Shown one piece after another: positions 2,395 to 46,964 of a stretch of 64,000 nt of DNA. The notes below the pieces were generated by a model. That model worked only from the letters and a program-made list of their open reading frames with translations, did no database searches and had not been told where the DNA came from. The stretch lies in the IMG/VR virus record IMGVR_UViG_3300021963_000021, positions 1 through 64,000 of that record. One strand, 5' to 3'. The stretch's first letter is position 1. Each line of letters begins with the position of its first letter. A program made the position numbers and the translations under genes.

Positions 2395-2619
2395 GTAGCT
2401 CTTAGCAGTCAGTATCTTTAGATTACTGTCTGTGAGCATGACCAAGGCTATCAGCTCTTTAGGCACGTAAAAGTCAACGCAGCCTAGCATTCCACTATGC
2501 GCAGCACCACCTTTTGACTGTATCAAACTCCATAGATACTCTGGATCCACTGAGCAGTAGTATGGATCATAGTGTACACAATATAGTGTGATTGGTAGTG
2601 TATATGTCGACGGCCCCAT
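2389..2619 (-). CDS. hypothetical protein
   Basis: 76-aa ORF with TTGACA-17bp-TATAGT promoter (2653-2625) 5 nt before ATG. Confidence 0.65.
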   Translation of the reverse strand: MGPSTYTLPITLYCVHYDPYYCSVDPEYLWSLIQSKGGAAHSGMLGCVDFYVPKELIALVMLTDSNLKILTAKSYL

Positions 2620-2767
2620 CGCTTACTATATAGCACTGTAGATCGACTGTCAAGAGATCCCACGGGGCCAAGAGGAGAAATTTTGCTAACCGTTTTGCAG
2701 CTTGCGCTGCGCTTCGCTAGCTAAAAACCGCTTGCACCGCTTCGCGGATATCTACTTTAGCGGGTCG

Positions 2768-3307
2768 TCAAGTCCAGAGATCAAAGTTGACCAAACACCT
2801 AGGGCCTGTTGTACTAGGGCTACCTGCGTGTAGGATCTTGCCGTCAAACATGACTACACGGCCTTTTTTGGGTGTAACACGTTTGACTATCTGCCTATTG
2901 TTGTCAAAGAACACAGTGTCTCCATCTGCGTCATTGACATAGTAAATGACCACTGTGTGTGCGCCTGGCAGATCCTGATGCGGGTGGAAATGCGTTAGTG
3001 TAGTTGCTGTGGGCGTGGCAATGAATATACGTGCTACTATGATGTCTTTCAGTGTGAGATTGCTCTGTGCGCAGGCTGCTTGTGCTATCATGCCAAAGTT
3101 AGCTAATTCTCTGCTCTGCGCAGTGTTGCTTTTTAATATGTGTACAAAACTCAAAGGTGAATATTCTGGGGTTTCAGCAGTGGGCTCCCATTGGCAACGG
3201 AACTCCACTGTGGGATGTATGAACTCATCACTGCTGCGGCCCAAGCAGATCAGCTCAAAGTAATCCTGTAGATATCCAGGTATTAGATCATCCCAGACTG
3301 TGATCAT
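2768..3307 (-). CDS. 2OG-Fe(II) oxygenase
   Basis: HxD (HQD), YYVNDADGDT, distal His (LHAG) and Arg (PRCLVN). Confidence 0.85.
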   Translation of the reverse strand: MITVWDDLIPGYLQDYFELICLGRSSDEFIHPTVEFRCQWEPTAETPEYSPLSFVHILKSNTAQSRELANFGMIAQAACAQSNLTLKDIIVARIFIATPTATTLTHFHPHQDLPGAHTVVIYYVNDADGDTVFFDNNRQIVKRVTPKKGRVVMFDGKILHAGSPSTTGPRCLVNFDLWT

Positions 3308-3894
3308 TAGGCAATCACTACAGTGTCAGCTACAGCCACTTCTTCAGCAAATAGGCCGTCGTAGTAAATGCGCATGTCTATGGTGTGTCCTGAGACCGCA
3401 GCAGCATCTAGGGTTTTGGTTATCACAGCTTGATTTTCGTTGACTGTGACACCTGCGCTGAGATCGTTGTCAGTGAAGTCTCCGCTGACCACAGTGCCGT
3501 CTGCCACATAGTAGATCACATCACCGTTGGCCACGCCCTGTGTGGTAATGGTCCAGGTAATGGTGTCTCCCACAGCAGCTGAACTGACATCTGCGGCGAT
3601 TTCGTAGCCCTGCCAACTGATCAGGATGTTTTCGTCAGCACCGCCCGTGGCGTAGAAACCCAAATCTATGCCCGCAGTGCCTGGTGCTGAACCATCATAG
3701 ACACGATATTCTTTGCGGCGCAGCCAGGCTTCTATGGTGTCTCGAGTTTCCACAGTTATGGTAACTTCTTTGGTAAACTTGCGATCTTTAGCTCGTTGAT
3801 CTATTAGGTTTAGTATTAGTCCGTAACGCTCGTCTAGTTCAGCGTCATCGAATTCCGAAGCAGCTTTGGCTCTGCTCTGTGCGGCTGTGCTCAT
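3307..3894 (-). CDS. putative virion protein with C-terminal Ig/Calx-beta-like domain
   Basis: Beta-rich Thr/Val/Asp C-terminal half; TAAATA late box at 3926-3931. Confidence 0.5.
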   Translation of the reverse strand: MSTAAQSRAKAASEFDDAELDERYGLILNLIDQRAKDRKFTKEVTITVETRDTIEAWLRRKEYRVYDGSAPGTAGIDLGFYATGGADENILISWQGYEIAADVSSAAVGDTITWTITTQGVANGDVIYYVADGTVVSGDFTDNDLSAGVTVNENQAVITKTLDAAAVSGHTIDMRIYYDGLFAEEVAVADTVVIA

Positions 3895-3941
3895 GTGTCT
3901 TTTCCTTAAGGCAAATTGATGGAAATATTTAGTGCCTGATC

Positions 3942-3970
3942 TTGACAGGCGTTGCTAAAAGTGGTATAAT
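3942..3970 (+). promoter_or_regulatory. sigma70-type promoter
   Basis: TTGACA-17bp-TATAAT, perfect consensus. Confidence 0.9.
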
Positions 3971-5789: not shown

Positions 5790-6049
5790 CCATTATTTAT
5801 CAGCCTAAGGTGTGTGCTGCGATATATGAATTCTTGGTCTACAACATCGTTGAATGTTTCTAAGACCAGCTGATTGATCTTGGTTTTTGGATCTACGTAA
5901 AGATAGCTCTGTGCGAGTTTAGCATCTAGATCTCGTATCCAACGACTGAGATCTAGACCAAGATGCTGTGCTGCTTCAGCCCAGGCTATTTTAAACTCTT
6001 TGCTGGTAGTGTCTGTCCACTGATATAGTATGTGCTTGTTACACTTCAT
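5771..6049 (-). CDS. hypothetical protein
   Basis: 92-aa ORF overlapping helicase stop. Confidence 0.55.
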   Translation of the reverse strand: MKCNKHILYQWTDTTSKEFKIAWAEAAQHLGLDLSRWIRDLDAKLAQSYLYVDPKTKINQLVLETFNDVVDQEFIYRSTHLRLINNGCEQKK

Positions 6050-7469
6050 CGCTAGAACCCAAACCGTTAATAAACTGCCTTAGTTTGGTTGATTCTACGA
6101 TTGCCTTGACTTTGCCTACTTCTACGCCTTTAGTGGGATCCTGTACGACCCCGTCATCATCTACTACTGTGCTGTTACGACTTTTGATTTGAGAAATTAT
6201 GCTTGAACTACGTTGTGAGCCTGCTTCATCTGATTGTTGATCTTCTGGAAGATCTGCGATACGCAATGTATCAATGTTGAAATCTAGATCTAGTTTTTGT
6301 CCAACACCACTGCTACTACGTGTCTTCATTAACTGGATCTGATAACGACCACGTTCACGCATAGCACGGCTTGTAAAGATACCAAACACGTTATCCGCAG
6401 TTTGAATCTTACTTAGACCACCTGAAATGTGACTGTGATCGAATTCTACTTCTTCTACAGCGCCACGATTCAACTGTGCGGCTGTGACCAACAATACCTG
6501 TTTTTCCATAGCCAAGTTACGCAATTCTTCTGACACATACTTGTCTTTGATAAACAGATTTTCTGCGGAGATCTTTTTACCTATGGGCATCAATAAGTCC
6601 AAATAGTCAACTAAAAGTACGTCTACTTTCTTGCCCATTTGTATTTCATATTCTTTTAGATACGCACGAATATCGTTGGTAGTTTTACCCGATGGCATGT
6701 ATTTGACCTGGAACATACCTGACTTCTTGCCTACTAGTTTGACTTTCATTTCAACATCGTCAATGTTCTTAAAAATGTCTTTGGTAGTCACACCTGTAAG
6801 CATCGAGTCAATACGCATAGATACCAGTGCTTCTGAAAGTTCTAATGTAAGGTACACAACATTAAGACCCATCGTAGCCCAGTTAACACCTAGATTGGCT
6901 AAGAACAAAGATTTGCCAGCACCAGATCCACCTGCCCAAATATTCAGTTCGCCTCTGTTCATACCACCAAACAGTTTACGATCCAAAGTACTCCAACCTG
7001 TAGATACCTGCCCGTTCTTGTCTTTGAGTCCCATCAGTCGTGCTCTAGGATCAGCAAAGTAGTTAGTACCCATGTCTCGAGCAAGGCCGATCTGTACAGC
7101 TTCTTTAACCAGTGCTTCTACCTGTCCGTAGTCTTTCTTTTCTAAAAGATCTGCTGATTTAATAATCGCACGTTCTAGACTCTTATGACGAGTAAACTGT
7201 TCAAAGTCATCTAAGAACCAATCCATGTGGCCGTCTTTGAGTTCACCTGGATGTGCTAGTTCAGTCTTACAGGCCGCATTGACCATGTTATATTCTGGCA
7301 GCACAGAATATTGCTCTGCGTATTGATGTACGAACTCTGCTGCTTCTTGTAGTTTGCGATCAAATAATGTGTGATCAAAAATGCCTTGGCAACGCACAAA
7401 TGTTTCTGCGTCAGCTAACATTATTTCAAGATAGAGTTTTTGTACGTCGTAGTCGTATTCTTTTATCAT
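6039..7469 (-). CDS. dnaB: DnaB/gp41-like replicative helicase
   Basis: Walker A GGSGAGKS, Walker B LLVDYLD, TAAQLNR, QLMKTR. Confidence 0.92.
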   Translation of the reverse strand: MIKEYDYDVQKLYLEIMLADAETFVRCQGIFDHTLFDRKLQEAAEFVHQYAEQYSVLPEYNMVNAACKTELAHPGELKDGHMDWFLDDFEQFTRHKSLERAIIKSADLLEKKDYGQVEALVKEAVQIGLARDMGTNYFADPRARLMGLKDKNGQVSTGWSTLDRKLFGGMNRGELNIWAGGSGAGKSLFLANLGVNWATMGLNVVYLTLELSEALVSMRIDSMLTGVTTKDIFKNIDDVEMKVKLVGKKSGMFQVKYMPSGKTTNDIRAYLKEYEIQMGKKVDVLLVDYLDLLMPIGKKISAENLFIKDKYVSEELRNLAMEKQVLLVTAAQLNRGAVEEVEFDHSHISGGLSKIQTADNVFGIFTSRAMRERGRYQIQLMKTRSSSGVGQKLDLDFNIDTLRIADLPEDQQSDEAGSQRSSSIISQIKSRNSTVVDDDGVVQDPTKGVEVGKVKAIVESTKLRQFINGLGSSDEV

Positions 7470-8426
7470 TTAACTATTATACTGTAATTCAAGATGTTTT
7501 ACAATACCTAAGTTACAGTTTATTCTCTGATTGGTGGTCAACAATGCTGCGCCGATAGCTGAACTACCGTCGCCGGGATCAGGCAATGACCATATACCTT
7601 TCCACTGTCTATTCAGCTTCTTGTTATACTTGCTGTTCATAGCACATCCGCCCATATAGACTAGATTGTCTATTGATGTATAAGAGTGTGCCAAGGCCAT
7701 AACCCAGTCTACCTGTTCTTCGAATACAGTCTGTACAGCAGCAGCAATATCAGCACGATTCTCGTCAGTGACTGGTTCGTCCCAATCCCATACACCTCTG
7801 TGTAGATTTCTATTCAGTGTCATAGGCGCATCAAAATAACCTTTGACTTTGAAATAGTATCTTTTGAAATCACCTTGATCACTGAGTTGCTGAAGCAGAT
7901 GCTCTTCTGCCAGTGGCTTGAATCCTATCAGTTTGGTGAATGCTGAGTAGAACAGGCCTAGACTGTTGGGATAAGATGCTGACCATAGTTTGGTTAATTT
8001 AGTGCCACTGCCTAACCAGATGCTGGCCGATTCCCATTCTCCAATAGCGTCTAACACTACTACTATTGCTTGATTAAATGGGCTGGTAAAAAAACCCGCA
8101 GCAGCATGTGATTTGTGGTGCGGGTGATATACTACTTTAGGATATCTTAGATTCATTGATCTTAGATAGTTGCTCGGCATCACTGACATATCCATGGCAG
8201 CATCCCATTGTCCCGCATACAACTGACGTGTCTTTTTAACCAACGGACGTTCGTACCAAGCGATAGTAGATGGACCTCGATAGCCACTGTAGTCAATGGC
8301 TTCTTTGACCATTTCTGACGTTAGGCGATCGCTGGAGTTATTCCTAATCCAATGTACGGTATCCTTGCCGCCTACTACAGCAATACTAGATCCGTGATTT
8401 AATGCGTTTACGCCCCAGACTATCAT
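7470..8426 (-). CDS. carbamoyltransferase N-terminal (Kae1-like) domain only
   Basis: HGSSIA, HHKSHAAA, DAIGE, SLGLFYS, GGCAMN, PGDGSSAIGAA; no C-terminal YrdC-like domain. Confidence 0.85.
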   Translation of the reverse strand: MIVWGVNALNHGSSIAVVGGKDTVHWIRNNSSDRLTSEMVKEAIDYSGYRGPSTIAWYERPLVKKTRQLYAGQWDAAMDMSVMPSNYLRSMNLRYPKVVYHPHHKSHAAAGFFTSPFNQAIVVVLDAIGEWESASIWLGSGTKLTKLWSASYPNSLGLFYSAFTKLIGFKPLAEEHLLQQLSDQGDFKRYYFKVKGYFDAPMTLNRNLHRGVWDWDEPVTDENRADIAAAVQTVFEEQVDWVMALAHSYTSIDNLVYMGGCAMNSKYNKKLNRQWKGIWSLPDPGDGSSAIGAALLTTNQRINCNLGIVKHLELQYNS

Positions 8427-8512
8427 TTATAGATAAAAGGATCGCGCTTACGCAGTTCACGTATCCTTCTCCTGTACTTGATATAATTGATTAACTTTCT
8501 AAATAAGTTCAT
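8423..8512 (-). CDS. 29-aa basic peptide MNLFRKLINYIKYRRRIRELRKRDPFIYK (absent from ORF track)
   Basis: ATGA overlaps at both ends (primase stop and carbamoyltransferase start). Confidence 0.75.
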   Translation of the reverse strand: MNLFRKLINYIKYRRRIRELRKRDPFIYK

Positions 8513-9504
8513 TTAACTTTTCTCTCGAACTGCTTCATATATAGATTTATCTTGATAGCACCACTGACAGCAGTATTCATGGCATCTACCATAACAAACA
8601 ATTTTCCGTATTTTGCCACAGCATCTGCGCAGTCTTTGACATCCGCATCCCAATTAGGAAATGCCACATGCCAATCATACTTTAATGCGTCTTTGATTAG
8701 ACTAGCACCTGCTCGATCTTGATCAGGAATAACAATCACAGTCTTACCTAGTTTGTTAATCAATCTTGCTTGTTCTTCTGATATCTCGTTGTGTAGTAGT
8801 GCTAGTCCTTGTACAGCAAGAGCATCAAATGGACCTTCTACAACAAATACATACTCTTGTTCTTGTGTAACACTATCCATGTTAAACACAAAATGCGGCT
8901 GTTGTTCACTGAGATATTTTGGCTTGCCTTCTTTGATCTTTCTGGCAGTCCATCCTACTATTCTTCCTGTGTATTTGAACGGTATGATTACACGCTCATC
9001 CATGCCATCTAAAGGACTCCAATAATATTCGCCTAATGGATCAATGCCCCTGCCAACAAGATAGTTAACTACGTTTGCTAGTTTTTGATCAGTATCTGCG
9101 TCCAGTTCTTGATCAATCCATTCGCTTAACAATAGACTACCTTCTGGTAAAGGTTTATCTGGAAATACTACTAGCTCTCTTTTTTGTTCTTTTACTTCAG
9201 GAGCTTCTGCTCTAAGAGCTTCGAATACCATCTTGTTGATATCGTCTTCAGGAGCACCTAACCAACGCATGAAGTTTTTTAGTTTTTGACCGATCTGTCT
9301 GCCTGGTTTCCAACTGGCTGTATATCCGCAGTTGAAACAGTTAAAGACTAGTCCTTCAGAAAATATCACACCACCACGTTGACGATTGTCTGCGGTATGC
9401 CCTCTATGATGACAACAGGGAGCATTGAAGCTAACCCATCCACTGGGTGTTTTTTTGCTTCGATGCGGTAAATGTTGTTTGAATATATCGACTACCAGAC
9501 TCAT
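8509..9504 (-). CDS. DNA primase (gp61/DnaG-like)
   Basis: Zn finger (CFNCG), IIPF...GWTAR, PKYL, TOPRIM VEGPFDA and PDQD. Confidence 0.9.
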   Translation of the reverse strand: MSLVVDIFKQHLPHRSKKTPSGWVSFNAPCCHHRGHTADNRQRGGVIFSEGLVFNCFNCGYTASWKPGRQIGQKLKNFMRWLGAPEDDINKMVFEALRAEAPEVKEQKRELVVFPDKPLPEGSLLLSEWIDQELDADTDQKLANVVNYLVGRGIDPLGEYYWSPLDGMDERVIIPFKYTGRIVGWTARKIKEGKPKYLSEQQPHFVFNMDSVTQEQEYVFVVEGPFDALAVQGLALLHNEISEEQARLINKLGKTVIVIPDQDRAGASLIKDALKYDWHVAFPNWDADVKDCADAVAKYGKLFVMVDAMNTAVSGAIKINLYMKQFERKVK

Positions 9505-9510: not shown

Positions 9511-9539
9511 ATTTTAATATCTGTATAGCACTTTGTCAA
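9511..9539 (-). promoter_or_regulatory. sigma70-type promoter for primase (leaderless)
   Basis: TTGACA-17bp-TAAAAT, 6 nt before ATG, no SD. Confidence 0.75.
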
Positions 9540-16389: not shown

Positions 16390-16461
16390 TTTACTATATT
16401 AACATCTTGCTTGCCAGAGATCAAGAATTTTCTGTGATTTTTTTGACTCAATAAATATCGT

Positions 16462-24458: not shown

Positions 24459-24496
24459 GCTAATATTTATATGTGTATATTATAGGGGAATGATAC

Positions 24497-26255: not shown

Positions 26256-26446
26256 TATTGATCCAACTCCATTGAATTCCATTCTTTGATTACTGCGATA
26301 ACCTCGTCTTCGGTACTACACATAGTCTTTGTGGTTTTCCATTCTTCTTTTTTATCGCGGCCACCAATTTCAACCATCCAACCATTGTCGTAACGGTTAA
26401 GAGTAATTGATTCGTTTACCTTTGCCAGTTTGTTTAATTTTGCCAT
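26255..26446 (-). CDS. hypothetical protein
   Basis: AAGGAG RBS before ATG 26446. Confidence 0.75.
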   Translation of the reverse strand: MAKLNKLAKVNESITLNRYDNGWMVEIGGRDKKEEWKTTKTMCSTEDEVIAVIKEWNSMELDQ

Positions 26447-29539: not shown

Positions 29540-29550
29540 GTTAATATTTA

Positions 29551-31137
29551 TCAAAATCCACTGCTGACAAAGATAGGCATAGGCATCTGATCTTCGGTTA
29601 ATCTTTCTGTCATTTTTTCATAAATCTGCGGATCCCAATCACTTAGGACTTCAGCCATGCGGCAGATCAACAAAGTAGATGACACTAAGTCATCGTGCTC
29701 ACCTGTTTTAGCACCAAATCCCACACCGTGTGCTACGAACGTTTTGAGCTCTGAAACTAAGGGCTTGCTGTGTATCTTCATTTTATATGTTTCAAGCATA
29801 TTTTTAAACACAGCGCAGGCAGCAATTTTAGTACGGTGTGTGGTATTGAACCCTTTACGGAACTTACGTACATGACCCTTACGTATAGGCTCGCTTAAGA
29901 ATAGCCCTGGAAAGTTTTCCTCACCAATATCGCTAATTACTACCAGTGCTGCTTCGCCTAATGTGTTGTTTTCTACAGAATAGTAAATTTGAGGAGTTCC
30001 GCCTTTTTCAGCACCACGATCTTGTATGTACTTACAAATCTCTCTCATGTGCTTGACCTGCTGTTGTATCGGTGTTAGGTTATGATGCCACTCTGCTACC
30101 TGAGTCATACTAGGCATTTCAAATACCTGTATAGCACCATAGTCTCCGCCTGTACCTAAGCTAGGATCGAGTGCGACTAGATATGTTGCTCGCGGATCAA
30201 CATCTTTGTACCAGCGTGTTTGCCCCATAGTCATTACAGGGTCAACACCTTTAATTTCCGCCAGCTTTACTGCGTTGATCAATGTTTCATCAAAGATCAA
30301 GAATTCGCAGTCAAATTCTCTGCGGAATCGTTCGTCACCAATCTTAGCACGTTCTATCTTAGCCCATGCTTCATCGCGATCTGGATGTTCTGCCCAGTGA
30401 GCAAAATACGAATAAAATCCGTTGGTTCCTAATTTTTGTTCGTTGCCAAACTCGTCAAACTTTTTGTTGGCTTCAGTCCAAATCAACGCAAACTGATCTT
30501 CGTCTGAGTTTGGTGTTGATGTGATAATACATTTACCACCTGTTGATAATGTTGGCGATAACGCAGTCCAGAACTCTTTAGCTTTCTCTGGGGGCTGTAC
30601 GAACGCAAACTCATCGCAGTAAATTAAAGAAAGAGACTTACCACGACCGGTGTTTTCTGTAGTAGTGGTAGCTTGGATTCTTGCTCCGTTATCGTATTCA
30701 ATAGTGTTCCTATTGTAACTGTAGACACCAGCACGAATAAAATCAGGTAAATTTTCATAGCCATACCTATAACGATTCATAATATCCTGCGCACCTTCAT
30801 ATTTGTGAGCAGCAATTAGAACTTGTGCTTCTGGTACAAACATTGTGTACCATAACAGATAACCTGTAGCACAGGTTGTTTTGCCCATCTGACGAGGTAA
30901 CATAGCAATACATTGCTTGTTTTCGTGGTAGGCCTGTATTAGACGTTCCTGGTATTCGTAGGGAACGAACGGGATCGATCCACGAACAGGATGTTGTATT
31001 TTAAGAAAGTTTTTACAAAAATAAAGTGGGCCCGTAACAGGATCCATACATGCTTCTAAGTGCTTAACTTCTTCTAGCGTGTATCTTTGTTTTGCGTGGG
31101 CCTTTTTGATTAAAACGCCATCAAGTGATTTTGCCAT
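29551..31137 (-). CDS. terL: terminase large subunit (gp17-like)
   Basis: YEYQ, PRQMGKT, YCDEFAF, TSTPN, ALDPS.G.GGD, HDDLV. Confidence 0.95.
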   Translation of the reverse strand: MAKSLDGVLIKKAHAKQRYTLEEVKHLEACMDPVTGPLYFCKNFLKIQHPVRGSIPFVPYEYQERLIQAYHENKQCIAMLPRQMGKTTCATGYLLWYTMFVPEAQVLIAAHKYEGAQDIMNRYRYGYENLPDFIRAGVYSYNRNTIEYDNGARIQATTTTENTGRGKSLSLIYCDEFAFVQPPEKAKEFWTALSPTLSTGGKCIITSTPNSDEDQFALIWTEANKKFDEFGNEQKLGTNGFYSYFAHWAEHPDRDEAWAKIERAKIGDERFRREFDCEFLIFDETLINAVKLAEIKGVDPVMTMGQTRWYKDVDPRATYLVALDPSLGTGGDYGAIQVFEMPSMTQVAEWHHNLTPIQQQVKHMREICKYIQDRGAEKGGTPQIYYSVENNTLGEAALVVISDIGEENFPGLFLSEPIRKGHVRKFRKGFNTTHRTKIAACAVFKNMLETYKMKIHSKPLVSELKTFVAHGVGFGAKTGEHDDLVSSTLLICRMAEVLSDWDPQIYEKMTERLTEDQMPMPIFVSSGF

Positions 31138-31151
31138 AACTTTATTTACAG

Positions 31152-31179
31152 AAAAAAATAGGCTCCGAAGAGCCTATTT
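31152..31179 (-). terminator. intrinsic terminator
   Basis: AAATAGGCTC-TTCG-GAGCCTATTTTTTT. Confidence 0.88.
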
Positions 31180-31194
31180 GGATCACATATCTTA

Positions 31195-32243: not shown

Positions 32244-32251
32244 ACTCATAT

Positions 32252-32731
32252 TTATTCTTTTCCTGAAAGTTTTTTAAGTAGCTCATTACGGTCAGTTATA
32301 ACAAACCCTTGCCCGTTTAGGACGTTTCCGTCCTCGTCACCGGCATCTTTGTCTATTTTGAGCTTTTTAAGTTTAAGCTCTACTGCTTTGAGCTTTTTAT
32401 CAATCTTCGCTGACTTGGCATCTATGGCATTTTTAAGCATAGTGCCCGCAACTTCTAAAATTCGACCGCTGTAACGTACTTCTACGTTCATGCCCAAATC
32501 CATAAGATCGTCGTAGGCATCTTCGGCCTTTTTTGCCAATGCGTCTAGGTCTTTTTCGTCTAGAGTGTCTAGGTCATCTATAGGGGGCAATGATCCGGCT
32601 ATTTGATCAATTTCTCTATAGCTGCGTTCTAGACTGCGTACTTCTTCTTTAGTTTCTTCGACTTGAGGTACAACTTCCTGAATGTTTTCAGGGCTATCTA
32701 GATTAAAGAGTTCTTCAAGTTTTTTAGTCAT
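32252..32731 (-). CDS. terminase small subunit (gp16-like)
   Basis: Helical; RILEV motif and C-terminal FVITDRNELLKKL; near terL and gp4. Confidence 0.6.
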   Translation of the reverse strand: MTKKLEELFNLDSPENIQEVVPQVEETKEEVRSLERSYREIDQIAGSLPPIDDLDTLDEKDLDALAKKAEDAYDDLMDLGMNVEVRYSGRILEVAGTMLKNAIDAKSAKIDKKLKAVELKLKKLKIDKDAGDEDGNVLNGQGFVITDRNELLKKLSGKE

Positions 32732-32738
32732 ACTTTAC

Positions 32739-33179
32739 TTATCTGCGTTTTGAGCCTTTATGGAAAATATCATCTTCGTTGACTACACGAAATTTGATAC
32801 CCTGCTGCTTACACCAAGCAGTAGCAGCTTCCCATTTGGCTAGATTTTTGATATACTGTTCTTGGTTATACAAGCTCTTGCCCACACGTTCTTTTAACGT
32901 ATGGTTACTGGGCTTAACTTCTACAACTTCGGCATGTGTTGATTTATTTTTGTCTACATATACTACAAAAAAATCAGGAACATACACGGTGTACTTGCCA
33001 GTTAACGGATCTTTATATGGAATCTGTATGCTTTCGCTGGCCCAGTTTTGTACTCCTGGATGCTCGTCTAACATTCTCATAAAAACAAATTCCCAACTGC
33101 TTCTAGCCAGCGGGCGTCTTTTCCCTATATATTTGTCAGGGTTTTTTAGAGTATACGGTCCTTGGGCAAATTTTGGCAT
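32739..33179 (-). CDS. head completion nuclease (gp4/TnsA-like)
   Basis: NPDKY, RSSWE, WASE..IPY, YVPDF, EVKP, NLAKW. Confidence 0.88.
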   Translation of the reverse strand: MPKFAQGPYTLKNPDKYIGKRRPLARSSWEFVFMRMLDEHPGVQNWASESIQIPYKDPLTGKYTVYVPDFFVVYVDKNKSTHAEVVEVKPSNHTLKERVGKSLYNQEQYIKNLAKWEAATAWCKQQGIKFRVVNEDDIFHKGSKRR

Positions 33180-33556: not shown

Positions 33557-33557
33557 A

Positions 33558-34652: not shown

Positions 34653-34668
34653 AATATTATTTAGTCGT

Positions 34669-34700
34669 AAAAAAAGCCCGACTTTAAATCGGGCTTTCTT
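34669..34700 (-). terminator. intrinsic terminator after tail tube
   Basis: AAAGCCCGA...TCGGGCTTTTTTT. Confidence 0.85.
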
Positions 34701-34715
34701 TGAGTTTTAGTGCTA

Positions 34716-35357: not shown

Positions 35358-35395
35358 GTCTTCTTGCTCCGGGTAATGTTATTTATCACGGAATC

Positions 35396-35417
35396 AAAGG
35401 GGTCATATGACCCCCTT
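35396..35417. terminator. hairpin after sheath gene
   Basis: AAGGGGTCA-TA-TGACCCCCTT. Confidence 0.55.
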
Positions 35418-38400: not shown

Positions 38401-38800
38401 GTCCGTTGGAAGCTTCTGAACCTGGTACTGTTTCTGTGCCAGTTAAGTCATCTAGATTAATATCTGCTCTTGCGATATATGCTGTGTTGGAAATACCTAA
38501 AAAGCTATATGCTGCTTGTAGACCGTATTCGTTTTGTTCGTCTCCGTTTCTTGGGTTTCCAGAGACTGTCTTTTTAAATGTAGGTGTTCCGTAAAATTCA
38601 GCCAACTCGCGTTGACTTGAAACACGGTATACCTTACCTATGTTTGCTGCTAGGGTACCTTTTGCTATTCCGGTGCCACTAGCGTTTGATTTATTCTGTG
38701 CGGTGGCTACAACAATAAGAGGAGTTGTTCCAGCTTCTGCTGGAGTATAAAAACTCTCGTCGTTTACGGTAACCTGTACGCCTGGTGATGTTAGAGCCAT
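35420..38800 (-). CDS. tail sheath protein (gp18-like) with large insertion
   Basis: SPGVQV, PWFAPAG..RG, LDRINVARL, FEPND, P.KAIEFI. Confidence 0.95.
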   Translation of the reverse strand: MALTSPGVQVTVNDESFYTPAEAGTTPLIVVATAQNKSNASGTGIAKGTLAANIGKVYRVSSQRELAEFYGTPTFKKTVSGNPRNGDEQNEYGLQAAYSFLGISNTAYIARADINLDDLTGTETVPGSEASNGQWWLDTQSTKWGLLEWDATPADLGGQKFVAKTPIVLSASDSDKIDNGAPASGVGKVGDYAVVAETDVIRYYYKGKNYTQSTSSAAWHLIGTPGWRGTSPTVTATVAGYANINDAYKFIVNGVAVTVGVGGQTAQNLANTINGYAIQGVRAGVVNNKVSFFVIDQTDGPGDSEGAASIMFETSSENPAITIADIFGFAAGQYYAPDLSIAAHTSVPQWKTSSQKPRPTGSVWVKATEPNQGARWRVKKWNDTSKAWVEVTAPLYASGHAAVYGIDKIAGGQNIVKDTLYVQYNYTEDTGYDATPQTAAFKLFTRRTSGAVSITSGQITDSTFSTSVSKSFTIRESVLGSRLLGTPSGETGTPSPITVTFTSVAGDGAANANAIAQAINNSELANIEATVSNNKVTISHKLGGEFRILDTSNVFTDIGFSGFDYNGSSGAWEGSVNLYPAPQGETYDFIASGWLPLAATLTGYVADMDPPLNDPADGQYWYSSAISEVDIMVHDGNTWVGYQNEFPLADPTGPLIGATKPVKQSDGVTNLQAGDLWIDTSDLENYPVIYRWNTDTLKWTAIDTSDSTSEEGVVFADARWTTGPGAGTESGTAADILDLLTSDFLDPDAPDPDLYPKGILLWNTRRSGFNVKVYRENYINTEDDNPRQGDQSMIDYFPSRWVTMSGEDFGRKAQRRVVVQALKEAISTNQEMREDEVRSFNLIACPGYPEVLQNLVDLNNDRGGTAFVVGDTPLRLPSDTASLVAWGNNENGATDNGDTGLVTYDAYSAVFYPSGLTNDNTGNTVVVPASHMMLKTIALSDQVSYPWFAPAGLRRGAITNATSVGYVDKTTGEFKSVSLTEGQRDALYGVKINPLTFFNGVGLVNYGQRTRSAGNSALDRINVARLVVFLRSQLNKLAKPYVFEPNDKITRDEIKQAIESLLLELVGLRAIYDYAVVCDETNNTPARIDRNELYVDIAIEPVKAIEFIYIPLRLKNTGEIQGARAS

Positions 38801-38908
38801 TCCGTTCTCTCCTGATGGGTTAAAACTTTGTATAGATATTTAGCGCCATTTGGTAAAAATACACTGTTATAACCCTAGGAAAAGGGATAAAAAAGGGTAA
38901 GTATGTAT

Positions 38909-39912: not shown

Positions 39913-40677
39913 TTAGCCAATCACAAATGTGTATCCTGCGTTAGCTGTACCTGGTACAAAGTTCACTAGTTCCGCTGTCAATCTTTCGATATCTGCTTGG
40001 GCTTCTTGTTTGAGGGCTGCTCCGTTGAGCTGTGTGCCTCCCTGTGGGCCTGCTATGCTGGCAAATTTTTCACGAGCTTGTCCTAACATCATCTTACAGT
40101 TAGCCAAAGTATAATCTTTGATCCAGATATTAGCATAAGTGTCTGTAAGTATAGCGTGGTCTGGCCGTGTGTTGTATACCCAAAGCATGATCTCTTCATC
40201 GGATCTTGGTCTTTGGTGAATAGTTAATTTGTGTGATTGAGCGTGCCATGTAAACTGAATAAAACTGCCAAACATTTTGCCCACACGTTCTTGATAGCCA
40301 GCAAAAAGTTCGTATGTTAACAGCCCGCCCATATTTGTTGAGCTTAACAAATAAGTGTTTGTATAGGCCAAGTTAAACGGCTCAAAAACAGTACCACCGT
40401 TTCCGCCGCCCGATCGAGATCCTATAGATCTTCTATACGCTTCTCTAACTACCTGTATTTCTTTAGGTAGTATGTATTCGTTTTGATCTATTTCCAGCTT
40501 CAAAAATGCGAAACTTTCTTCCACTGAATTATCACCGCGTTGTCTGAATATAGCAAGAGATCTATCCAGCGCAGTTGTATAATGTATAGGGTCTAGCTCT
40601 ACATCAACCATACCGTCGCCCAACATGGTTTTACAGTAATCGTAGACTTTTTGTTTTTCTTGATCTATTTGGCTCAT
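39913..40677 (-). CDS. neck/head-tail adaptor protein (gp13-like)
   Basis: LG...VDVEL, WIKDY, REKF...GPQGGTQLNG. Confidence 0.85.
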   Translation of the reverse strand: MSQIDQEKQKVYDYCKTMLGDGMVDVELDPIHYTTALDRSLAIFRQRGDNSVEESFAFLKLEIDQNEYILPKEIQVVREAYRRSIGSRSGGGNGGTVFEPFNLAYTNTYLLSSTNMGGLLTYELFAGYQERVGKMFGSFIQFTWHAQSHKLTIHQRPRSDEEIMLWVYNTRPDHAILTDTYANIWIKDYTLANCKMMLGQAREKFASIAGPQGGTQLNGAALKQEAQADIERLTAELVNFVPGTANAGYTFVIG

Positions 40678-40682: not shown

Positions 40683-40703
40683 TATTTATTACAGCGGTAA
40701 ATA
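40683..40703. promoter_or_regulatory. back-to-back T4-type late promoters
   Basis: TATTTA (40683-40688, minus) and TAAATA (40698-40703, plus) between divergent neck genes. Confidence 0.75.
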
Positions 40704-40710
40704 TATGACT

Positions 40711-42027
40711 ATGCCAAGACTCAGTTTATACAAGCCCGAAAAAGGCAACGATTACAGATTTTTTGACCGTAATATTTGGGAGATGTTCCAAGTAGGCGGT
40801 ACGGATGTGCTGCTACACAAGTATGTAGGGCCAGGTGCTCCTGCTCCTGGTGAAAGCAGCCCTACAATACCGAACTATACCAGCGGTATTCCTGAACTAC
40901 AAATACAAGATCTTTTGTTTTTAGAAAACAGAGATCGTAAGTATGACCCAGATATCTATCTTATGAGGGGCATATACAACATACAAGACATAGACTTTAA
41001 CCTAAGTCAGTTTGGTCTATTCTTACAAAATGACGTAATTTTTATTACATTCCATATCAACGACACTATAGAAAAAATAGGTCGTAAAATTATGGCAGGT
41101 GATGTTCTCGAGTTGCCCCATTTGAAGGACGATCATGCTCTTAATGATCTTAAATTTGCTCTAAAAAGATTTTATGTCATAGAAGAAGTTAACAGAGCAG
41201 CTGAAGGGTTTTCAGCTACTTGGTATCCTCACTTGTATAGAGCCAAATGTAAACCTTTAGTAGACAGTCAAGAGTTTAAACAGATATTAGATGGAATCGC
41301 CGATACTGAAAACTTCAAAGGCACATACAACCCAGCCGCAACATACTATCCTGATGATGTTGTTACTGGCCCAGACGGTAGAAAATACACAGTGACCGCA
41401 CAGGTAACTGGAATTGCTCCTCCTAACAGTACCTACTACAGAGATGCCGATACCTTAAGAGAAATAATGAGCACCTACGAAAAAGAAATGCAGATCACAA
41501 ACGCAGTTTTAGATCAAGCAGAAGCAGATGCTCCAAGAAGTGGCTACGACACATCTATGTTCTATACTGTGCCGTTAGATGAAAATGGTAAAATAAAACT
41601 AAACACAGTAGATAAAGATACAGTTACCGCAGACAATGCTGATCCTAACGCAGGCAGTGACGCTAGTATGATTGTTGCTTCTCCAGTTAAAGACGGATAC
41701 CAAAGCTATCACGAAGATGGTATTACACCAAATGGTGCTCCTTTTACCAGTGGTATAGCATTCCCTCAGACGCCAGTCGAAGGACAATTTTGCCTAAGAA
41801 CAGATTATTTTCCAAAGAGACTGTTTAGATATAACGGAACACGTTGGGTCAAATACGAAGATAATGTACGAATGACTATGAGTAACAATGGAACAGATTC
41901 CGCTGATACTAGACTTAATCAGAAAGGTACATTTATTAACAATAACACAGTATCTACTATTGACGGAAAACAAATACAAGAGAAACAAAGCCTTAGCAAG
42001 GCACTACGACCAAAGGCAGATGAATAA
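40711..42027 (+). CDS. neck protein (gp14-like)
   Basis: DLLFLENRDRKY, LSQFGLF, GDVLELP; start 40705 or 40711. Confidence 0.75.
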   Translation: MPRLSLYKPEKGNDYRFFDRNIWEMFQVGGTDVLLHKYVGPGAPAPGESSPTIPNYTSGIPELQIQDLLFLENRDRKYDPDIYLMRGIYNIQDIDFNLSQFGLFLQNDVIFITFHINDTIEKIGRKIMAGDVLELPHLKDDHALNDLKFALKRFYVIEEVNRAAEGFSATWYPHLYRAKCKPLVDSQEFKQILDGIADTENFKGTYNPAATYYPDDVVTGPDGRKYTVTAQVTGIAPPNSTYYRDADTLREIMSTYEKEMQITNAVLDQAEADAPRSGYDTSMFYTVPLDENGKIKLNTVDKDTVTADNADPNAGSDASMIVASPVKDGYQSYHEDGITPNGAPFTSGIAFPQTPVEGQFCLRTDYFPKRLFRYNGTRWVKYEDNVRMTMSNNGTDSADTRLNQKGTFINNNTVSTIDGKQIQEKQSLSKALRPKADE

Positions 42028-43460: not shown

Positions 43461-43477
43461 AACAGATACATAATAGC

Positions 43478-44956: not shown

Positions 44957-45444
44957 CCCAGTGTCTGCTCCAACCAAGTCTTACAATTAGGCCAACTTCT
45001 GTAAATGTGTGCCCTACCACCAGCTCTAATCCATTCTTCGCAGTTACTATTGCGATCGTCAATTAAAATGTCACCTGGTTCTCTACAGTGCATGTATTTT
45101 TCGTAACTGTAAGGGCCAAGAAACACAGGTATGTGTGGAAAATGTTCTTGTGCCCAAAATACTTTATCCTGAGGTGCCCAGGGCATGTCGTTGCCTTTGG
45201 GAATAGCACTGAGAAAATAGAGACCGCAGCCTGTAATTGATTTATATGTTGTTACCCAATTGACTAATTCATATGCGCCTTCTTTGATTGGAAGTTTGCT
45301 GTACATACGCTGATCATCTTTGAGCCTACGCCAAGTTGAGTCAGGTAAAAGGTCACCGTCTTTAAACAAAGGTGCTTTTAGATAATCTCTAGCGTAGCCA
45401 TACCAATCAGCTACAACATCATCCATGTCTAGATATATGTTCAT
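44953..45444 (-). CDS. HAD-family phosphatase (5'(3')-nucleotidase-like)
   Basis: YLDMDDVVAD, DK..W, ILIDD..SN..EW..AGG. Confidence 0.8.
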   Translation of the reverse strand: MNIYLDMDDVVADWYGYARDYLKAPLFKDGDLLPDSTWRRLKDDQRMYSKLPIKEGAYELVNWVTTYKSITGCGLYFLSAIPKGNDMPWAPQDKVFWAQEHFPHIPVFLGPYSYEKYMHCREPGDILIDDRNSNCEEWIRAGGRAHIYRSWPNCKTWLEQTLG

Positions 45445-45833
45445 GATTTTTCTGCGTTTTCAAAAATCTGTTTCTGACTGTCACCTGGGATAATTCTGTA
45501 ATTGTCCTCTACACTGTCAGCAGTACTGACTTCAAACAGCATGGCATTGTCTGTTAATGCTTCTAGTTGGTGCGGCTGTAATGGAGGGTTATGCCATGTG
45601 TCGCCTTCGCTGAGATCTTTTTCAAACAGCACCGCACGTTCTGTATCTATCCAACGGACTTTAAACTTGCCGCTGTTAACAAACCATGTTTCGTCTTTGT
45701 CTTTATGGAAGTGCATAGAAAATTTATTTCCTGCCTTAGTAAAGCACAGTATTTTTCCGCAGTATTTTTCGTTGGTGGCAAATATTAATTCGTATCCCCA
45801 GCCTTTTTCTTGATAACCTTGTAATTGTGTCAT
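45441..45833 (-). CDS. cupin-fold sugar isomerase-like protein
   Basis: KGWG.E, SMHFH..KDET, PH, EVST...EDNYR..PGD. Confidence 0.82.
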   Translation of the reverse strand: MTQLQGYQEKGWGYELIFATNEKYCGKILCFTKAGNKFSMHFHKDKDETWFVNSGKFKVRWIDTERAVLFEKDLSEGDTWHNPPLQPHQLEALTDNAMLFEVSTADSVEDNYRIIPGDSQKQIFENAEKS

Positions 45834-46579
45834 TTTATTTCCTCTATTTTTGGAGCATAACAACCTACGTGCTGTACTGTTATTGACGCAGCGTTGTTGG
45901 CAAATTCTACTGCCGTTTTAATTTCTTTTGTTTCTAGATACATGTAGGCTAACGCAGATAAAAAAGTATCGCCTGCGCCTGTAACATCAACTACTTCAAC
46001 TGAGGGAGCAGGGGAAGAAATGTCATGATGCTTTATTATTGCGCCTTTAGCACCTTTGGTAACTATCAGTCCTGTACATTCAGATTTGATTTTACTATAT
46101 TCTAATTCATTGATCTTAACCCATGCGCCTTGTAATCGTTCTAGATCTGTTTTCTTTGTGTCAACAAACACAGGAATTCTAGTAGCTATGGCTTCCTCAA
46201 TAACATCGTAGGATACCGTACCTTTGTCGTAGTCGCTGATAACAATAGCATCATAGACTTTAGGTATTGCTGTCACAAACTCAATTGGGGTTGAGCTGGC
46301 ATCATTGTCTATTCTAACAATCTGTTGTTTACTGCGTATATCTATCAAGCGTGTCTTGGTTGAGCAGTCGCCGTGTAAGAAGTTAACTTCGCAGCCCAGT
46401 GCTTCTAGATTACGAGCAACATTGCCGGCCATACCTGGTTTTTGTTCTTCATGACTAAACTTAAACACAGGCACAGGTGCTTCCGGACTGATGCGATCCA
46501 CAGTGCCGTATTGATATATGTCAAGACAATTATCGCCGATCAATAATATCTTGTATCTTTTTTGTTGTTGAATAACCAT
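45830..46579 (-). CDS. D-glycero-D-manno-heptose-7-phosphate kinase (HldA/RfaE domain I, PfkB family)
   Basis: RISPEAPVP, GMAGNVA.N, SDYDKG, DVTGAGDT. Confidence 0.9.
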   Translation of the reverse strand: MVIQQQKRYKILLIGDNCLDIYQYGTVDRISPEAPVPVFKFSHEEQKPGMAGNVARNLEALGCEVNFLHGDCSTKTRLIDIRSKQQIVRIDNDASSTPIEFVTAIPKVYDAIVISDYDKGTVSYDVIEEAIATRIPVFVDTKKTDLERLQGAWVKINELEYSKIKSECTGLIVTKGAKGAIIKHHDISSPAPSVEVVDVTGAGDTFLSALAYMYLETKEIKTAVEFANNAASITVQHVGCYAPKIEEIK

Positions 46580-46925
46580 CGATTCTTTCAAAAAATTCTA
46601 TCCTTTTACAGACCTCTTCGCCTACTATAGGTTTTCCCTGCCAATCGGCACCCTTGACCATTACATCACAGTCTGCGATAAGATTTCTTAATTCGGTATC
46701 TGTTTCGAAAACTTTAACATCTGATACAGCTCTAAGGCTTTTTAACATTTTAGTACGTTCAAATTGATTATTAATTGGCCGACTGTGACCTTTTAATCTG
46801 CGTACACGCTCGTCAGAATCTATGCCCACGATTACCTCGTTACCGAGGCTCTGTGCGTATTCTAATAGTTCAATGTGTCCGACATGAAGTATGTCAAAGG
46901 TGCCATTCACAAAAACACGAGTCAT
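46530..46925 (-). CDS. heptose-1-phosphate nucleotidyltransferase (HldC/RfaE domain II)
   Basis: NGTFDILHVGH, LKG..RPIN...R, KGADW, GYSTT. Confidence 0.9.
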   Translation of the reverse strand: MTRVFVNGTFDILHVGHIELLEYAQSLGNEVIVGIDSDERVRRLKGHSRPINNQFERTKMLKSLRAVSDVKVFETDTELRNLIADCDVMVKGADWQGKPIVGEEVCKRIEFFERIDGYSTTKKIQDIIDRR

Positions 46926-46964
46926 ACTATATTTTAGTATAGTACGACCCGGTTTGTCAACGGA

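What the first reader, a model, noticed from the sequence alone, without database searches (positions are those of the whole stretch)
2600..46960. Pervasive leaderless-mRNA architecture for middle and late genes
Seen: a T4-late-like TAAATA box (variants TAAGTA, TACATA) lies only 4-5 nt before the ATG, with no room for an SD, at starts 5789, 16462, 24458, 29539, 31137 (terL), 32243, 32731, 34652, 38909, 40677 and 43478. Sigma70 -10 boxes lie 5-6 nt before the ATG at 2619, 7469 (helicase), 9504 (primase), 16389 and 46925. In contrast, early cassettes, gp32, sheath and tube have leaders with GGAG. Inference: +1 coincides with the start codon. The phage may use leaderless initiation for low-copy proteins and SD-led initiation for high-copy ones, or to resist host translation shut-off.
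Basis: partly seen in the sequence, partly recalled or inferred. Interest (0 to 1): 0.6.

Follow-up and report, generated by a model that had tools for sequence, protein, structure and literature searches.

The report
Promoters abutting start codons: leaderless phage genes
In this 364-kb environmental jumbo phage and hundreds of relatives, about a third of T4-type late promoters and a fifth of host-type promoters sit so close to the ATG that the mRNA should start at the start codon, a conserved and apparently undescribed way of expressing T4-like phage genes without a ribosome-binding site.

Summary
All 16 sites were verified. Genome-wide, the distance from the box to the next gene ATG has two peaks. 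For TAAATA the peaks are 4-5 nt (24 cases) and 16-28 nt with a Shine-Dalgarno (SD) site (about 43). For TTGACA-17-TAnnnT they are 5-7 nt (11) and 22-37 nt.

TAAATA is a T4-type late promoter. The phage encodes a gp55-like sigma, there is no -35 element, and SD-led copies precede sheath, tube, baseplate and fibre genes. T4 geometry (box at -13..-6) puts +1 on the A of the ATG.

The candidates lack an SD and all use ATG. They have a pyrimidine at -1 in 27/33 cases against 76/183 for SD-led genes. Several lie directly after terminators or in divergent gaps of 24-39 nt.

In up to 80 relatives per gene, box and spacing are conserved while the spacer sequence varies. This holds for terL, adaptor, primase and three other genes.

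The limits are these:
- No TSS map exists, and the metatranscriptome contigs are only suggestive.
- "Pervasive" overstates about 8% of genes.
- One-mismatch boxes are not enriched as a class.
- Some sites could also use re-initiation.

PA5oct, CBB, Phosso and T4 lack the pattern. Verdict: a new variant of a known kind.

The parts
31143..31148 (-). TAAATA late-promoter box, 5 nt before the terL ATG at 31137
   Evidence: Of 40 distinct ortholog upstream sequences, 36 keep TAAATA-N4-6-ATG, with 20 different spacer sequences.
31152..31179 (-). Intrinsic terminator (hairpin plus T7) that ends 3 nt before the terL promoter box
   Evidence: The hairpin is kept in relatives through compensatory changes, for example GGCTC/GAGCC, GGCCC/GGGCC and GCATCC/GGGTGC.
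29551..31137 (-). terL gene, a leaderless candidate
   Evidence: 52-53% identity to Phosso and PA5oct terL, aligned from residue 1; no SD, and no other start codon in the ORF.
34658..34663 (-). TAAATA box 5 nt before ATG 34652 (tube-like protein, 33558-34652)
   Evidence: Metatranscriptome contigs end at 34638 (X10) and 34633 (X11), and only a depth-2 contig crosses the start.
34669..34697 (-). Intrinsic terminator directly upstream of the 34652 promoter box
29545..29550 (-). TAAATA box 5 nt before ATG 29539 (virion protein), immediately after the terL stop codon
   Evidence: TAAATA plus about 5 nt plus ATG is kept across all 80 ortholog loci, and the N-terminus shifts so that the spacing is preserved.
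32249..32254 (-). TAAATA box 5 nt before ATG 32243. Its TAA is the stop codon of the upstream gene.
   Evidence: (A/C)TAAATA-N5-ATG in the 65 orthologs. An AAGGA lies 12 nt upstream, so weak SD use on read-through RNA is not excluded.
32736..32741 (-). TAAGTA variant box 4 nt before ATG 32731 (terS-like gene). Its TAA is the stop codon of the upstream gene.
   Evidence: kept in the 64 orthologs with a 4-5 nt spacer. Contig X11 ends at 32710. The variant class as a whole is not enriched.
40683..40688 (-). TAAATA box 5 nt before ATG 40677 (head-tail adaptor)
   Evidence: ATAAATA is 97-100% conserved, the spacing is 5 in 38/38 distinct sequences, spacer columns are 45-79% conserved, and -1 is always C or T.
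40698..40703 (+). TAAATA box of the divergent virion-protein gene. The conserved start is ATG 40711 (7-nt spacer, so a predicted leader of about 2-3 nt). The ATG at 40705 is not conserved.
   Evidence: The two divergent ATGs are 33 nt apart here and 24 nt apart in some relatives, where the two boxes abut as TATTTATAAATA.
16452..16457 (+). TAAATA box 4 nt before ATG 16462
   Evidence: Orthologs have either TAAATA-N5-ATG or TAAATA-N16 containing GGAGG before the ATG.
24464..24469 (-). TAAATA box 5 nt before ATG 24458 (nucleotidyltransferase-like gene)
5794..5799 (-). TAAATA box 4 nt before ATG 5789
43467..43472 (+). TACATA variant box 5 nt before ATG 43478
   Evidence: the 18 orthologs examined keep TA(C/T/G)ATA-N5-ATG with C or T at -1. 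Its status as a promoter is uncertain.
38898..38903 (+). TAAGTA variant box 5 nt before ATG 38909 (HNH-like ORF)
   Evidence: No conservation test was made, so it is uncertain.
9511..9539 (-). Sigma70-type promoter TTGACA-17-TAAAAT, 6 nt before the primase ATG at 9504
   Evidence: It is conserved in 80 relatives whose primase is 43-69% identical, and 1 of 62 distinct sequences has an SD-like word.
7476..7504 (-). TTGTAA-17-TATAAT, 6 nt before the DnaB-like helicase ATG at 7469. The upstream gene's TAA stop abuts the ATG.
   Evidence: Translational coupling is an alternative at this site.
2625..2653 (-). TTGACA-17-TATAGT, 5 nt before ATG 2619
16396..16424 (-). TTGATC-17-TAATAT, 6 nt before ATG 16389. 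This gene is divergent from 16462, and the ATGs are 72 nt apart.
46931..46960 (-). TTGACA-18-TAAAAT, 5 nt before ATG 46925. The promoter fills the 39-nt gap after the stop codon of the 2608-aa ORF.
   Evidence: the phrog profile aligns from residue 1.
35380..35385 (-). Contrast case: TAAATA box 22 nt before the tail-tube ATG at 35357, with GGAG in the leader
38837..38842 (-). Contrast case: TAAATA box 36 nt before the tail-sheath ATG at 38800, with AGGAGA in the leader

Best explanation
The phage uses two promoter classes. Host sigma70-type promoters (TTGACA-17-TAnnnT) serve early and replication genes. T4-type late promoters ((R)A-TAAATA with no -35 element) are read by host RNA polymerase carrying the phage's gp55-like sigma.

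In each class a defined subset is built with the -10-type box 4-6 nt from an ATG. Transcription would then begin at, or within 1-3 nt of, the A of the start codon. The resulting mRNAs have no leader and no Shine-Dalgarno site. They must be translated through recognition of a 5'-terminal AUG, the 70S/IF2-type leaderless pathway known from lambda cI.

The remaining promoters are followed by short SD-containing leaders of 11-30 nt. Abundant proteins (major capsid, sheath, tube, gp32) use the SD-led form. terL, the adaptor, primase, helicase and many small unknown proteins use the leaderless form.

Shown here: the boxes, the spacings, the absence of an SD, the gp55 homologue, and conservation across the clade. 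Inferred: the exact transcription start, the mode of translation, and the expression-level rationale.
For: Spacing and geometry:
- Box-to-ATG spacing has two peaks in both promoter classes, with almost nothing in between.
- The late box and its A/R-rich 5' flank are the same in the leaderless and SD-led sets, and there is no -35 signal.
- The T4 late box lies at -13..-6 (PMC1524935), so +1 falls on the A of the ATG at 5-nt spacing.
- Primase orthologs aligned at the ATG place the -10 box at -12..-7 and the -35 box at -35..-30.

Identity of the promoter:
- A gp55-like sigma lies at G000 110038-110928 (phrog_12791 E = 1.7e-78; T4 gp55 E = 3.4e-7).
- SD-led TAAATA genes encode baseplate, fibre, sheath and tube proteins.

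Features of the candidate starts:
- They have no SD.
- The ATG is usually the first start codon in the ORF.
- There is no credible SD-led start downstream.
- Every candidate starts with ATG.
- Position -1 is a pyrimidine in 27/33 candidates against 76/183 SD-led genes, p = 1.9e-5.

No room for a leader:
- Terminators sit directly before the box at 31137, 34652 and 91856.
- Divergent ATG pairs lie only 24-39 nt apart.

Conservation in relatives:
- Box and spacing are kept while the spacer varies for terL, adaptor, 29539, 32243, 32731 and primase.
- Orthologs of 16462 switch between N5 and N16-with-GGAGG.
- Five large relatives show 2-4-fold enrichment of the pattern over control.

Transcripts: RNA-library contigs end 14-21 nt inside ATGs 34652 and 32731, and depth changes sharply across 34652.
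Against: - No transcription start was mapped. The RNA data are assembled contigs, which cannot define 5' ends.
- One contig (X10 record 2) runs across 31137 and 32731. Another ends 22 nt upstream of 29539. Read-through RNAs covering these starts therefore exist.
- At 4-nt spacing, a rigid T4 geometry would start on the U of AUG.
- At 7469, 29539, 32243 and 32731 an upstream stop codon adjoins or overlaps the box, so re-initiation could deliver ribosomes.
- The 5' ends of the candidates are not less structured than those of SD-led genes.
- The host is unknown, so its ability to translate leaderless mRNA is unknown.
- No gp45-type clamp was detected.
Confidence: 0.8

Rival explanations
1. The genes are translated mainly from longer read-through polycistronic RNAs, by termination-reinitiation or 70S scanning from the upstream cistron. 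On this view the nearby box is a promoter or stop-codon context that matters little for their translation.
For: - The upstream stop abuts or overlaps the box or the ATG at 7469 (TAAATG), 29539, 32243 and 32731.
- RNA contigs bridge 31137 and 32731 in run X10.
- An AAGGA is conserved 12 nt before 32243.
Against: - It cannot apply where a terminator directly precedes the box (31137, 34652, 91856).
- It cannot apply where the neighbouring gene is divergent (40677/40711, 16389/16462, 252941/252981).
- It does not explain why an exact hexamer at an exact distance is conserved while the spacer varies.
- It does not explain the pyrimidine at -1.
- It does not explain the full TTGACA-17-TATAAT geometry kept before primase in 80 relatives.
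Confidence: 0.1
2. TAAATA next to the ATG is an RNA-level element rather than a promoter. It could be an AU-rich translation enhancer for ribosomal protein S1, or an operator for a RegA-like translational repressor.
For: - AU-rich sequences 5' of a start codon can replace an SD in E. coli (general knowledge).
- The box always lies within 10 nt of the AUG in this class.
Against: - The same box, with the same flank, lies 16-28 nt upstream of SD-led late structural genes, ahead of the SD.
- A gp55-type sigma is present.
- The sigma70-type class shows the same abutting geometry with a full -35/-10 pair.
- The hexamer is invariant, unlike loosely defined AU-rich enhancers.
Confidence: 0.05
3. The pattern is chance in AT-rich intergenic DNA, or the start codons are wrongly chosen.
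For: - The raw pattern count is only about 1.7 times the Markov expectation, 25 against 14.8 +/- 4.
- One-mismatch variants are not enriched.
- Two of the 35 hits lie inside longer ORFs.
Against: - The hexamer is depleted 2.6-fold, yet 23 of 24 hits open real ORFs.
- tblastn alignments start at residue 1 in up to 80 relatives per gene.
- Phrog profiles align from residues 1-3.
- The distantly related phages PA5oct, CBB, Phosso and T4 show no enrichment, whereas members of this clade do.
Confidence: 0.03

Closest known systems
Bacteriophage T4 late promoters (TATAAATA at -13..-6, read by gp55 with gp33 and the gp45 clamp)
   Same: - There is a gp55 homologue.
- The box is an A/T-rich -10-type element of 7-8 bp with no -35 element.
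- The first position of the box is poorly conserved, as in other T4-like phages (PMC1524935).
- The box precedes virion genes.
   Different: - In T4 the late box is followed by a leader with an SD. The TAAATA-N4-5-ATG pattern is not enriched in T4, PA5oct, CBB or Phosso.
- Here about a third of the boxes abut the ATG.
- The gp55-like protein is 296 aa, against 185 aa in T4.
- gp33 was not sought.
- No gp45-type clamp was found.
Lambda cI mRNA from PRM, the classic leaderless mRNA
   Same: A sigma70 promoter whose +1 is the A of the AUG, with no SD. The primase, 2619 and 46925 promoters here have this geometry.
   Different: Lambda has one regulatory gene of this kind. Here there are dozens of genes, including structural and packaging genes, and a second, phage-sigma promoter class.
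Thermus phages phiYS40 and Lalka27a, in which most transcripts are leaderless (bioRxiv 10.64898/2026.04.20.719267)
   Same: A phage-wide use of leaderless transcripts across temporal classes, including late promoters with a phage-specific -10 element.
   Different: - In the Thermus phages most transcripts are leaderless, and the host phylum itself favours leaderless mRNA.
- Here a minority is leaderless (about 8% of genes). SD-led genes with strong GGAG sites coexist. The promoter is T4-type, and the host is probably a proteobacterium.
- phiKZ and AR9, jumbo phages with their own polymerases, have no leaderless transcripts (PMC8244752, PMC5312081).
Pseudomonas phage PA5oct and the RaK2/CBB-like jumbo phages, the nearest cultured relatives
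   Same: terL is 43-53% identical, and they belong to the same T4-superfamily core. PA5oct promoters are reported as TTGAC/TATAATA (bioRxiv 10.1101/406421). PA5oct and Phosso also carry bS21.
   Different: There is no enrichment of the abutting pattern. CBB terL has an SD-like leader.

Membership tests
T4-type late transcription system | Phage-encoded gp55-family sigma | tested here: met
   An ORF at G000 110038-110928(-) matches phrog_12791 'sigma factor for late transcription' (E = 1.7e-78), phrog_234 (E = 4e-24) and T4 gp55 (E = 3.4e-7).
T4-type late transcription system | TATAAATA-like box about 8 bp long, without a -35 element, upstream of late (virion) genes | tested here: met
   The box reads (R)A-TAAATA with flat composition upstream. 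It precedes sheath, tube, baseplate wedge and fibre genes. The hexamer is depleted elsewhere in the genome.
T4-type late transcription system | Sliding clamp (gp45) and co-activator (gp33) | tested here: inconclusive
   T4 gp45 protein and Pfam PF02916 found nothing in the genome. gp33 was not searched for. Divergent homologues are possible.
T4-type late transcription system | Transcription starts about 5 nt after the box | not testable with these tools
   Only assembled RNA contigs were available. Raw reads or 5'-end mapping are needed.
Leaderless mRNA | A -10 element placed so that +1 falls on the start codon | tested here: met
   The late box lies 4-5 nt, and the sigma70 -10 box 5-7 nt, before the ATG. 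The primase consensus has the -10 box at -12..-7 relative to the A of the ATG. Pyrimidine at -1 is enriched.
Leaderless mRNA | No Shine-Dalgarno site, and an AUG rather than GUG or UUG start | tested here: met
   31 of the 33 retained candidates have no SD-like word; two have only AGGT. There are 0 GTG/TTG gene starts at 4-5 nt from an exact box. The start is ATG in every ortholog sequence listed.
Leaderless mRNA | Mapped primary 5' end at the start codon, and translation from it | not testable with these tools
   Contig ends at 34633-34638 and 32710 are compatible, but contigs also bridge other sites.
Phage with predominantly leaderless transcripts (phiYS40 type) | Most transcripts are leaderless | tested here: not met
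   About 33 of about 406 genes qualify, which is about 34% of late and about 20% of sigma70-type promoter-gene pairs.

The most novel reading that the evidence does not exclude
A globally distributed clade of T4-superfamily jumbo phages (at least 600 IMG/VR contigs, from freshwater, estuarine and marine samples) runs a deliberate two-mode translation programme. Strong SD leaders serve the abundant proteins. Leaderless mRNAs, made from gp55-type and sigma70-type promoters that abut the ATG, serve catalytic and low-copy proteins. On this reading the phage's own initiation factor IF1, and perhaps its ribosomal protein bS21, retunes host ribosomes to favour 5'-AUG (70S-type) initiation during infection.
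Probability: 0.15. Interest if true: 0.8.

Novelty: new variant of a known kind. Interest (0 to 1): 0.55.

Why it matters
T4-type late transcription is one of the best-studied phage regulatory systems. It has always been described with SD-led messages, and a text search of the held library found no report that links T4-type late promoters or T4-superfamily jumbo phages to leaderless mRNAs.

If the prediction holds, three things follow:
- Gene callers that rely on ribosome-binding-site models will mis-start or miss such genes in a very abundant environmental phage clade. PA5oct terL already looks mis-started.
- The clade offers a natural, conserved set of matched promoters with and without leaders. 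These could be used to study how leaderless initiation sets protein dosage.
- It makes testable the idea that phage-encoded IF1 and bS21 shift the mode of initiation.

The terminator-promoter-ATG module of about 45 nt is also a very compact expression unit.

Tried and rejected
- One-mismatch variants of TAAATA are not enriched at 4-5 nt as a class. TAAGTA and TACATA are therefore accepted only where orthologs conserve them.
- 5'-end folding energy (first 25 or 40 nt) does not differ between leaderless candidates and SD-led genes (p = 0.13 and 0.54), so it does not discriminate.
- The megablast search of the phage collection found no match. A protein search was needed to find relatives.
- The tube-like protein alone retrieved only an identical IMG/VR fragment.
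- The pattern was scanned in PA5oct, Phosso, CBB and T4 and is not enriched there, so it is not a general T4-superfamily trait.
- The T4 gp45 protein and Pfam DNA_PPF searches for a clamp gave no hit. IF3_C also gave none.
- Linking IF1 or bS21 to the architecture did not give a clean correlation. IF1 is in the clade but also in Phosso. bS21 is also in PA5oct and Phosso.
- Host identification through bS21 gave only 46-54% matches, the fullest-length ones mostly to Betaproteobacteria (Methylophilaceae/OM43, Nitrosomonadales, Burkholderiales), with shorter ~50% matches to many Gammaproteobacteria such as Rheinheimera. That is a weak hint only.
- The metatranscriptome contigs are compatible at 34652 and 32731 but bridge 31137 and extend past 29539, so they are not decisive.
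- My simple gene caller (406 genes) and its start picker are rough. Counts that depend on it are approximate.

Full report
**What the window is.** The 64-kb window is the first part of a 363,943-bp IMG/VR virus record rated complete, with about 41% GC. It has no near-identical cultured relative. Its terL is 52-53% identical to that of Sinorhizobium phage Phosso and the Pseudomonas phage PA5oct group, and 43-48% identical to Atu_ph07, CBB, GAP32 and similar phages. It is therefore a T4-superfamily jumbo phage.

PHROG scans assign these genes in the window:

| Coordinates | Assignment |
|---|---|
| 35420-38800 | tail sheath |
| 34716-35357 | tail tube |
| 33558-34652 | tube-like paralogue |
| 32739-33179 | head closure |
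| 32252-32731 | terS-like |
| 29551-31137 | terL |
| 39913-40677 | head-tail adaptor |
| 26505-27488 | gp32-like SSB |
| 25188-26282 | UvsX |
| 6039-7469 | DnaB-like helicase |
| 8509-9504 | primase |

The DNA occurs in marine, estuarine and freshwater metagenomes and in four freshwater metatranscriptomes.

**Checking the observation.** I laid the whole genome in the Python box and asked whether the arrangement exceeds chance. The results were:
- TAAATA occurs 145 times on both strands, against 376 +/- 18 in first-order Markov simulations, so it is strongly avoided.
- The distance from TAAATA to the next ATG has two peaks. There are 24 cases at 4-5 nt, 23 of which open an ORF of at least 50 aa. 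There are about 43 cases at 13-30 nt (mostly 16-28), and those leaders contain GGAG-type SD sites. Almost nothing lies between.
- TTGAC-16..18-TAnnnT sites behave the same way: 11 at 5-7 nt and about 40 at 22-37 nt.
- No GTG or TTG gene start lies 4-5 nt from an exact box.
- One-mismatch variants of the box are not enriched at 4-5 nt.

**What the box is.** The leaderless and SD-led TAAATA sets share the same flank: A at the position before the box and a purine before that. Neither set shows any -35 signal. The box is thus (R)A-TAAATA, the T4 late consensus TATAAATA with the variable first position already noted for other T4-like phages (PMC1524935; PMC2988020).

A gp55-family late sigma is encoded at 110038-110928 on the minus strand. 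SD-led TAAATA genes encode baseplate wedge, tail fibres, virion proteins, sheath and tube. I found no gp45-type clamp by T4 protein or Pfam search and did not look for gp33, so that part of the T4 system is unconfirmed.

**Why the starts should be leaderless.**
1. *Geometry.* The T4 late box occupies -13..-6, so a 5-nt spacer puts +1 on the A of the ATG. For the sigma70 class, 62 distinct primase upstream sequences aligned at the ATG give TTGACA at -35..-30 and TAtAnT at -12..-7.
2. *Start-site dinucleotide.* Position -1 is C or T in 27 of 33 candidates, against 76 of 183 SD-led genes (Fisher p = 1.9e-5). In orthologs it is C or T in 36/36 terL and 38/38 adaptor sequences.
3. *No room for a leader.*
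   - At terL (31137), at 34652 and at 91856, an intrinsic terminator with its T-run ends 3-6 nt before the box.
   - The promoter for 46925 fills the 39-nt gap after a 2608-aa ORF.
   - Divergent start codons lie 72 nt apart (16389/16462), 33 nt apart (40677/40711) and 39 nt apart (252941/252981).
   - In some relatives the adaptor pair is 24 nt apart, with the two boxes abutting as TATTTATAAATA.
4. *The starts are right.* In most of the 35 candidates the ATG is the first start codon in the ORF. No SD is present, and there is no credible SD-led start downstream. Two hits (261688, 299032) lie inside longer ORFs and were dropped. tblastn alignments to relatives begin at residue 1, and PHROG profiles align from residues 1-3.

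**Comparative evidence.** IMG/VR holds at least 595 terL relatives and about 600 adaptor relatives.
- *terL.* Among 40 distinct upstream sequences, 36 have terminator, T-run, TAAATA, N4-6, ATG. The spacing is N5 in 27, N4 in 7 and N6 in 2. There are 20 different spacer sequences, and the hairpin changes are compensatory. The other four carry an SD-led or an overlapping-stop arrangement instead.
- *Adaptor.* ATAAATA is 97-100% conserved and the spacing is 5 in 38/38 sequences, while spacer columns are 45-79% conserved.
- *Other late genes.* Orthologs of 29539 keep the box about 5 nt from the ATG across the 80 loci, with the N-terminus shifting to preserve the spacing. Orthologs of 32243 (65) and 32731 (TAAGTA, 64) also keep box and spacing. 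The SD-led neighbour 31680 keeps its GGGAG.
- *43478.* Its orthologs keep TA(C/T/G)ATA-N5-ATG.
- *Primase.* Its promoter is conserved down to 43% protein identity, and only 1 of 62 sequences contains an SD-like word.
- *16462.* Its orthologs have either TAAATA-N5-ATG or TAAATA-N16 containing GGAGG. This is a natural switch between the two designs.
- *Whole genomes.* Five large relatives show the pattern at 15-38 copies against 6-13 for the reversed control. PA5oct, Phosso, CBB and T4 do not. The trait is therefore specific to this clade.

**Transcript data.** Only assembled contigs of RNA libraries could be laid on 29401-35400, in one call of 6,000 bases.
- Depths differ 40-fold between adjacent contigs, which argues for RNA rather than contaminating DNA.
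- Contigs end at 34638 (X10) and 34633 (X11), just inside ATG 34652, and only a depth-2 contig crosses that start.
- An X11 contig ends at 32710, inside ATG 32731.
- Against this, an X10 contig runs from 29738 to 32837 across 31137 and 32731, and another ends at 29561, upstream of 29539. Read-through RNA therefore exists.

Contigs cannot define ends, so this evidence is compatible with the model but not decisive.

**Mechanism and rivals.**
- *Best explanation (0.8).* Promoters that abut the ATG give leaderless or near-leaderless mRNAs, which are translated by 5'-AUG recognition.
- *Re-initiation from an upstream cistron.* This is plausible as an added route at 7469, 29539, 32243 and 32731. It cannot explain the sites after terminators, the divergent sites, or the conserved promoter geometry.
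- *An RNA-level enhancer or operator reading of the box.* This does not fit, because the same box lies ahead of the SD in late structural genes.
The major capsid gene (ATG 93094) has AGGAGA. Sheath, tube and gp32 have strong SD sites. terL, adaptor, primase and helicase do not. It remains an inference.

**Comparison with what is known.** Leaderless mRNAs are known from lambda cI and are the rule in Thermus phages phiYS40 and Lalka27a. phiKZ has none, and AR9 has long leaders. The PA5oct preprint reports TTGAC/TATAATA promoters and does not contain the word 'leaderless'. Text searches found no paper that links T4-type late promoters or T4-superfamily jumbo phages with leaderless transcripts. 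I therefore rate this a new variant of a known kind.

**Side findings.**
- The phage encodes a full-length IF1 (71 aa; 264590-264775) and ribosomal protein bS21 (292290-292445).
- IF1 and IF2 stimulate leaderless translation in vitro (PMC9031893). Ribosomes that lack bS21 and uS2 favour it (PMC10491246).
- IF1 is also in Phosso, and bS21 is also in PA5oct and Phosso. No specific link to the architecture is shown.
- The closest bacterial matches to bS21 are 46-54% identical. The fullest-length ones are mostly betaproteobacterial; many Gammaproteobacteria give shorter ~50% matches.

No alternative genetic code was used. 

Noticed in passing
G000:C1:264590-264775 (-) and 292290-292445 (-), outside the window: The phage encodes a full-length translation initiation factor IF1 (71 aa; PF01176, 83.5 bits) and ribosomal protein bS21 (PF01165, 58.5 bits). 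No IF3 was found. IF1 is also present in two clade relatives and in Phosso. bS21 is also present in PA5oct and Phosso.
   Followed up: partly
L091:1710-2282 (-) = G000 about 264799-265371: A ClpP-like protease ORF (190 aa, judged by eye from the translation) lies immediately upstream of the IF1 gene.
   Followed up: no
G000:C1:252941 (-) / 252981 (+): Two divergent genes have ATGs only 39 nt apart. Each has TAAATA 4 nt upstream, so they form a back-to-back leaderless promoter pair.
   Followed up: partly
window 40698-40713: The first ATG of the virion-protein ORF (40705) is not conserved in relatives. The conserved start is 40711, 7 nt after a TAAATA box. In some relatives the two divergent boxes fuse into the palindrome TATTTATAAATA.
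   Followed up: yes
L007:356-385 (PA5oct NC_071039.1 128846-128875): The annotated PA5oct terL start lies inside a terminator-like hairpin (AAAAGGGTG..CACCCTTTT plus a T-run). The alignment suggests that the true start is the ATG 27 nt downstream, directly after the T-run.
   Followed up: partly
window 700-1500 (+): There are repeated early cassettes. Each has a near-identical leader, TATAATACACACAC...AAGGAGCGAAC, before a small ORF (ATGs at 739, 1008 and 1477). The first 2 kb is unusually GC-rich (51%) with strong AT skew.
   Followed up: no
whole genome G000: The hexamer TAAATA is 2.6-fold depleted (145 observed against about 376 expected). This fits selection against spurious late promoters.
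   Followed up: yes
L259-L266 (orthologs of window 16389/16462): The same late box drives the ortholog of 16462 either without a leader (N5) or with a 16-nt leader containing GGAGG. This is a natural pair of alternative designs.
   Followed up: partly
L010-L089 (terL relatives): Eight of the 80 relatives replace the terminator-TAAATA-ATG module before terL. Six have an SD-led junction (AAGGAT..CCCC ATG), and two have a junction with the stop codon directly abutting the ATG.
   Followed up: partly
window 46965-54791 (-): This is a 2608-aa ORF of unknown role. Its stop codon lies 39 nt upstream of the leaderless candidate 46925, and that gap is filled exactly by a TTGACA-18-TAAAAT promoter.
   Followed up: no
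loci L092-L107: The fullest-length bacterial matches to the phage bS21 (46-54% identity) are mostly Betaproteobacteria (OM43/Methylophilaceae, Nitrosomonadales, Variovorax, Polaromonas), alongside shorter ~50% matches to many Gammaproteobacteria (Rheinheimera, Alishewanella). Some hits are short MAG contigs that may themselves be phage. This is a weak hint to the host.
   Followed up: partly
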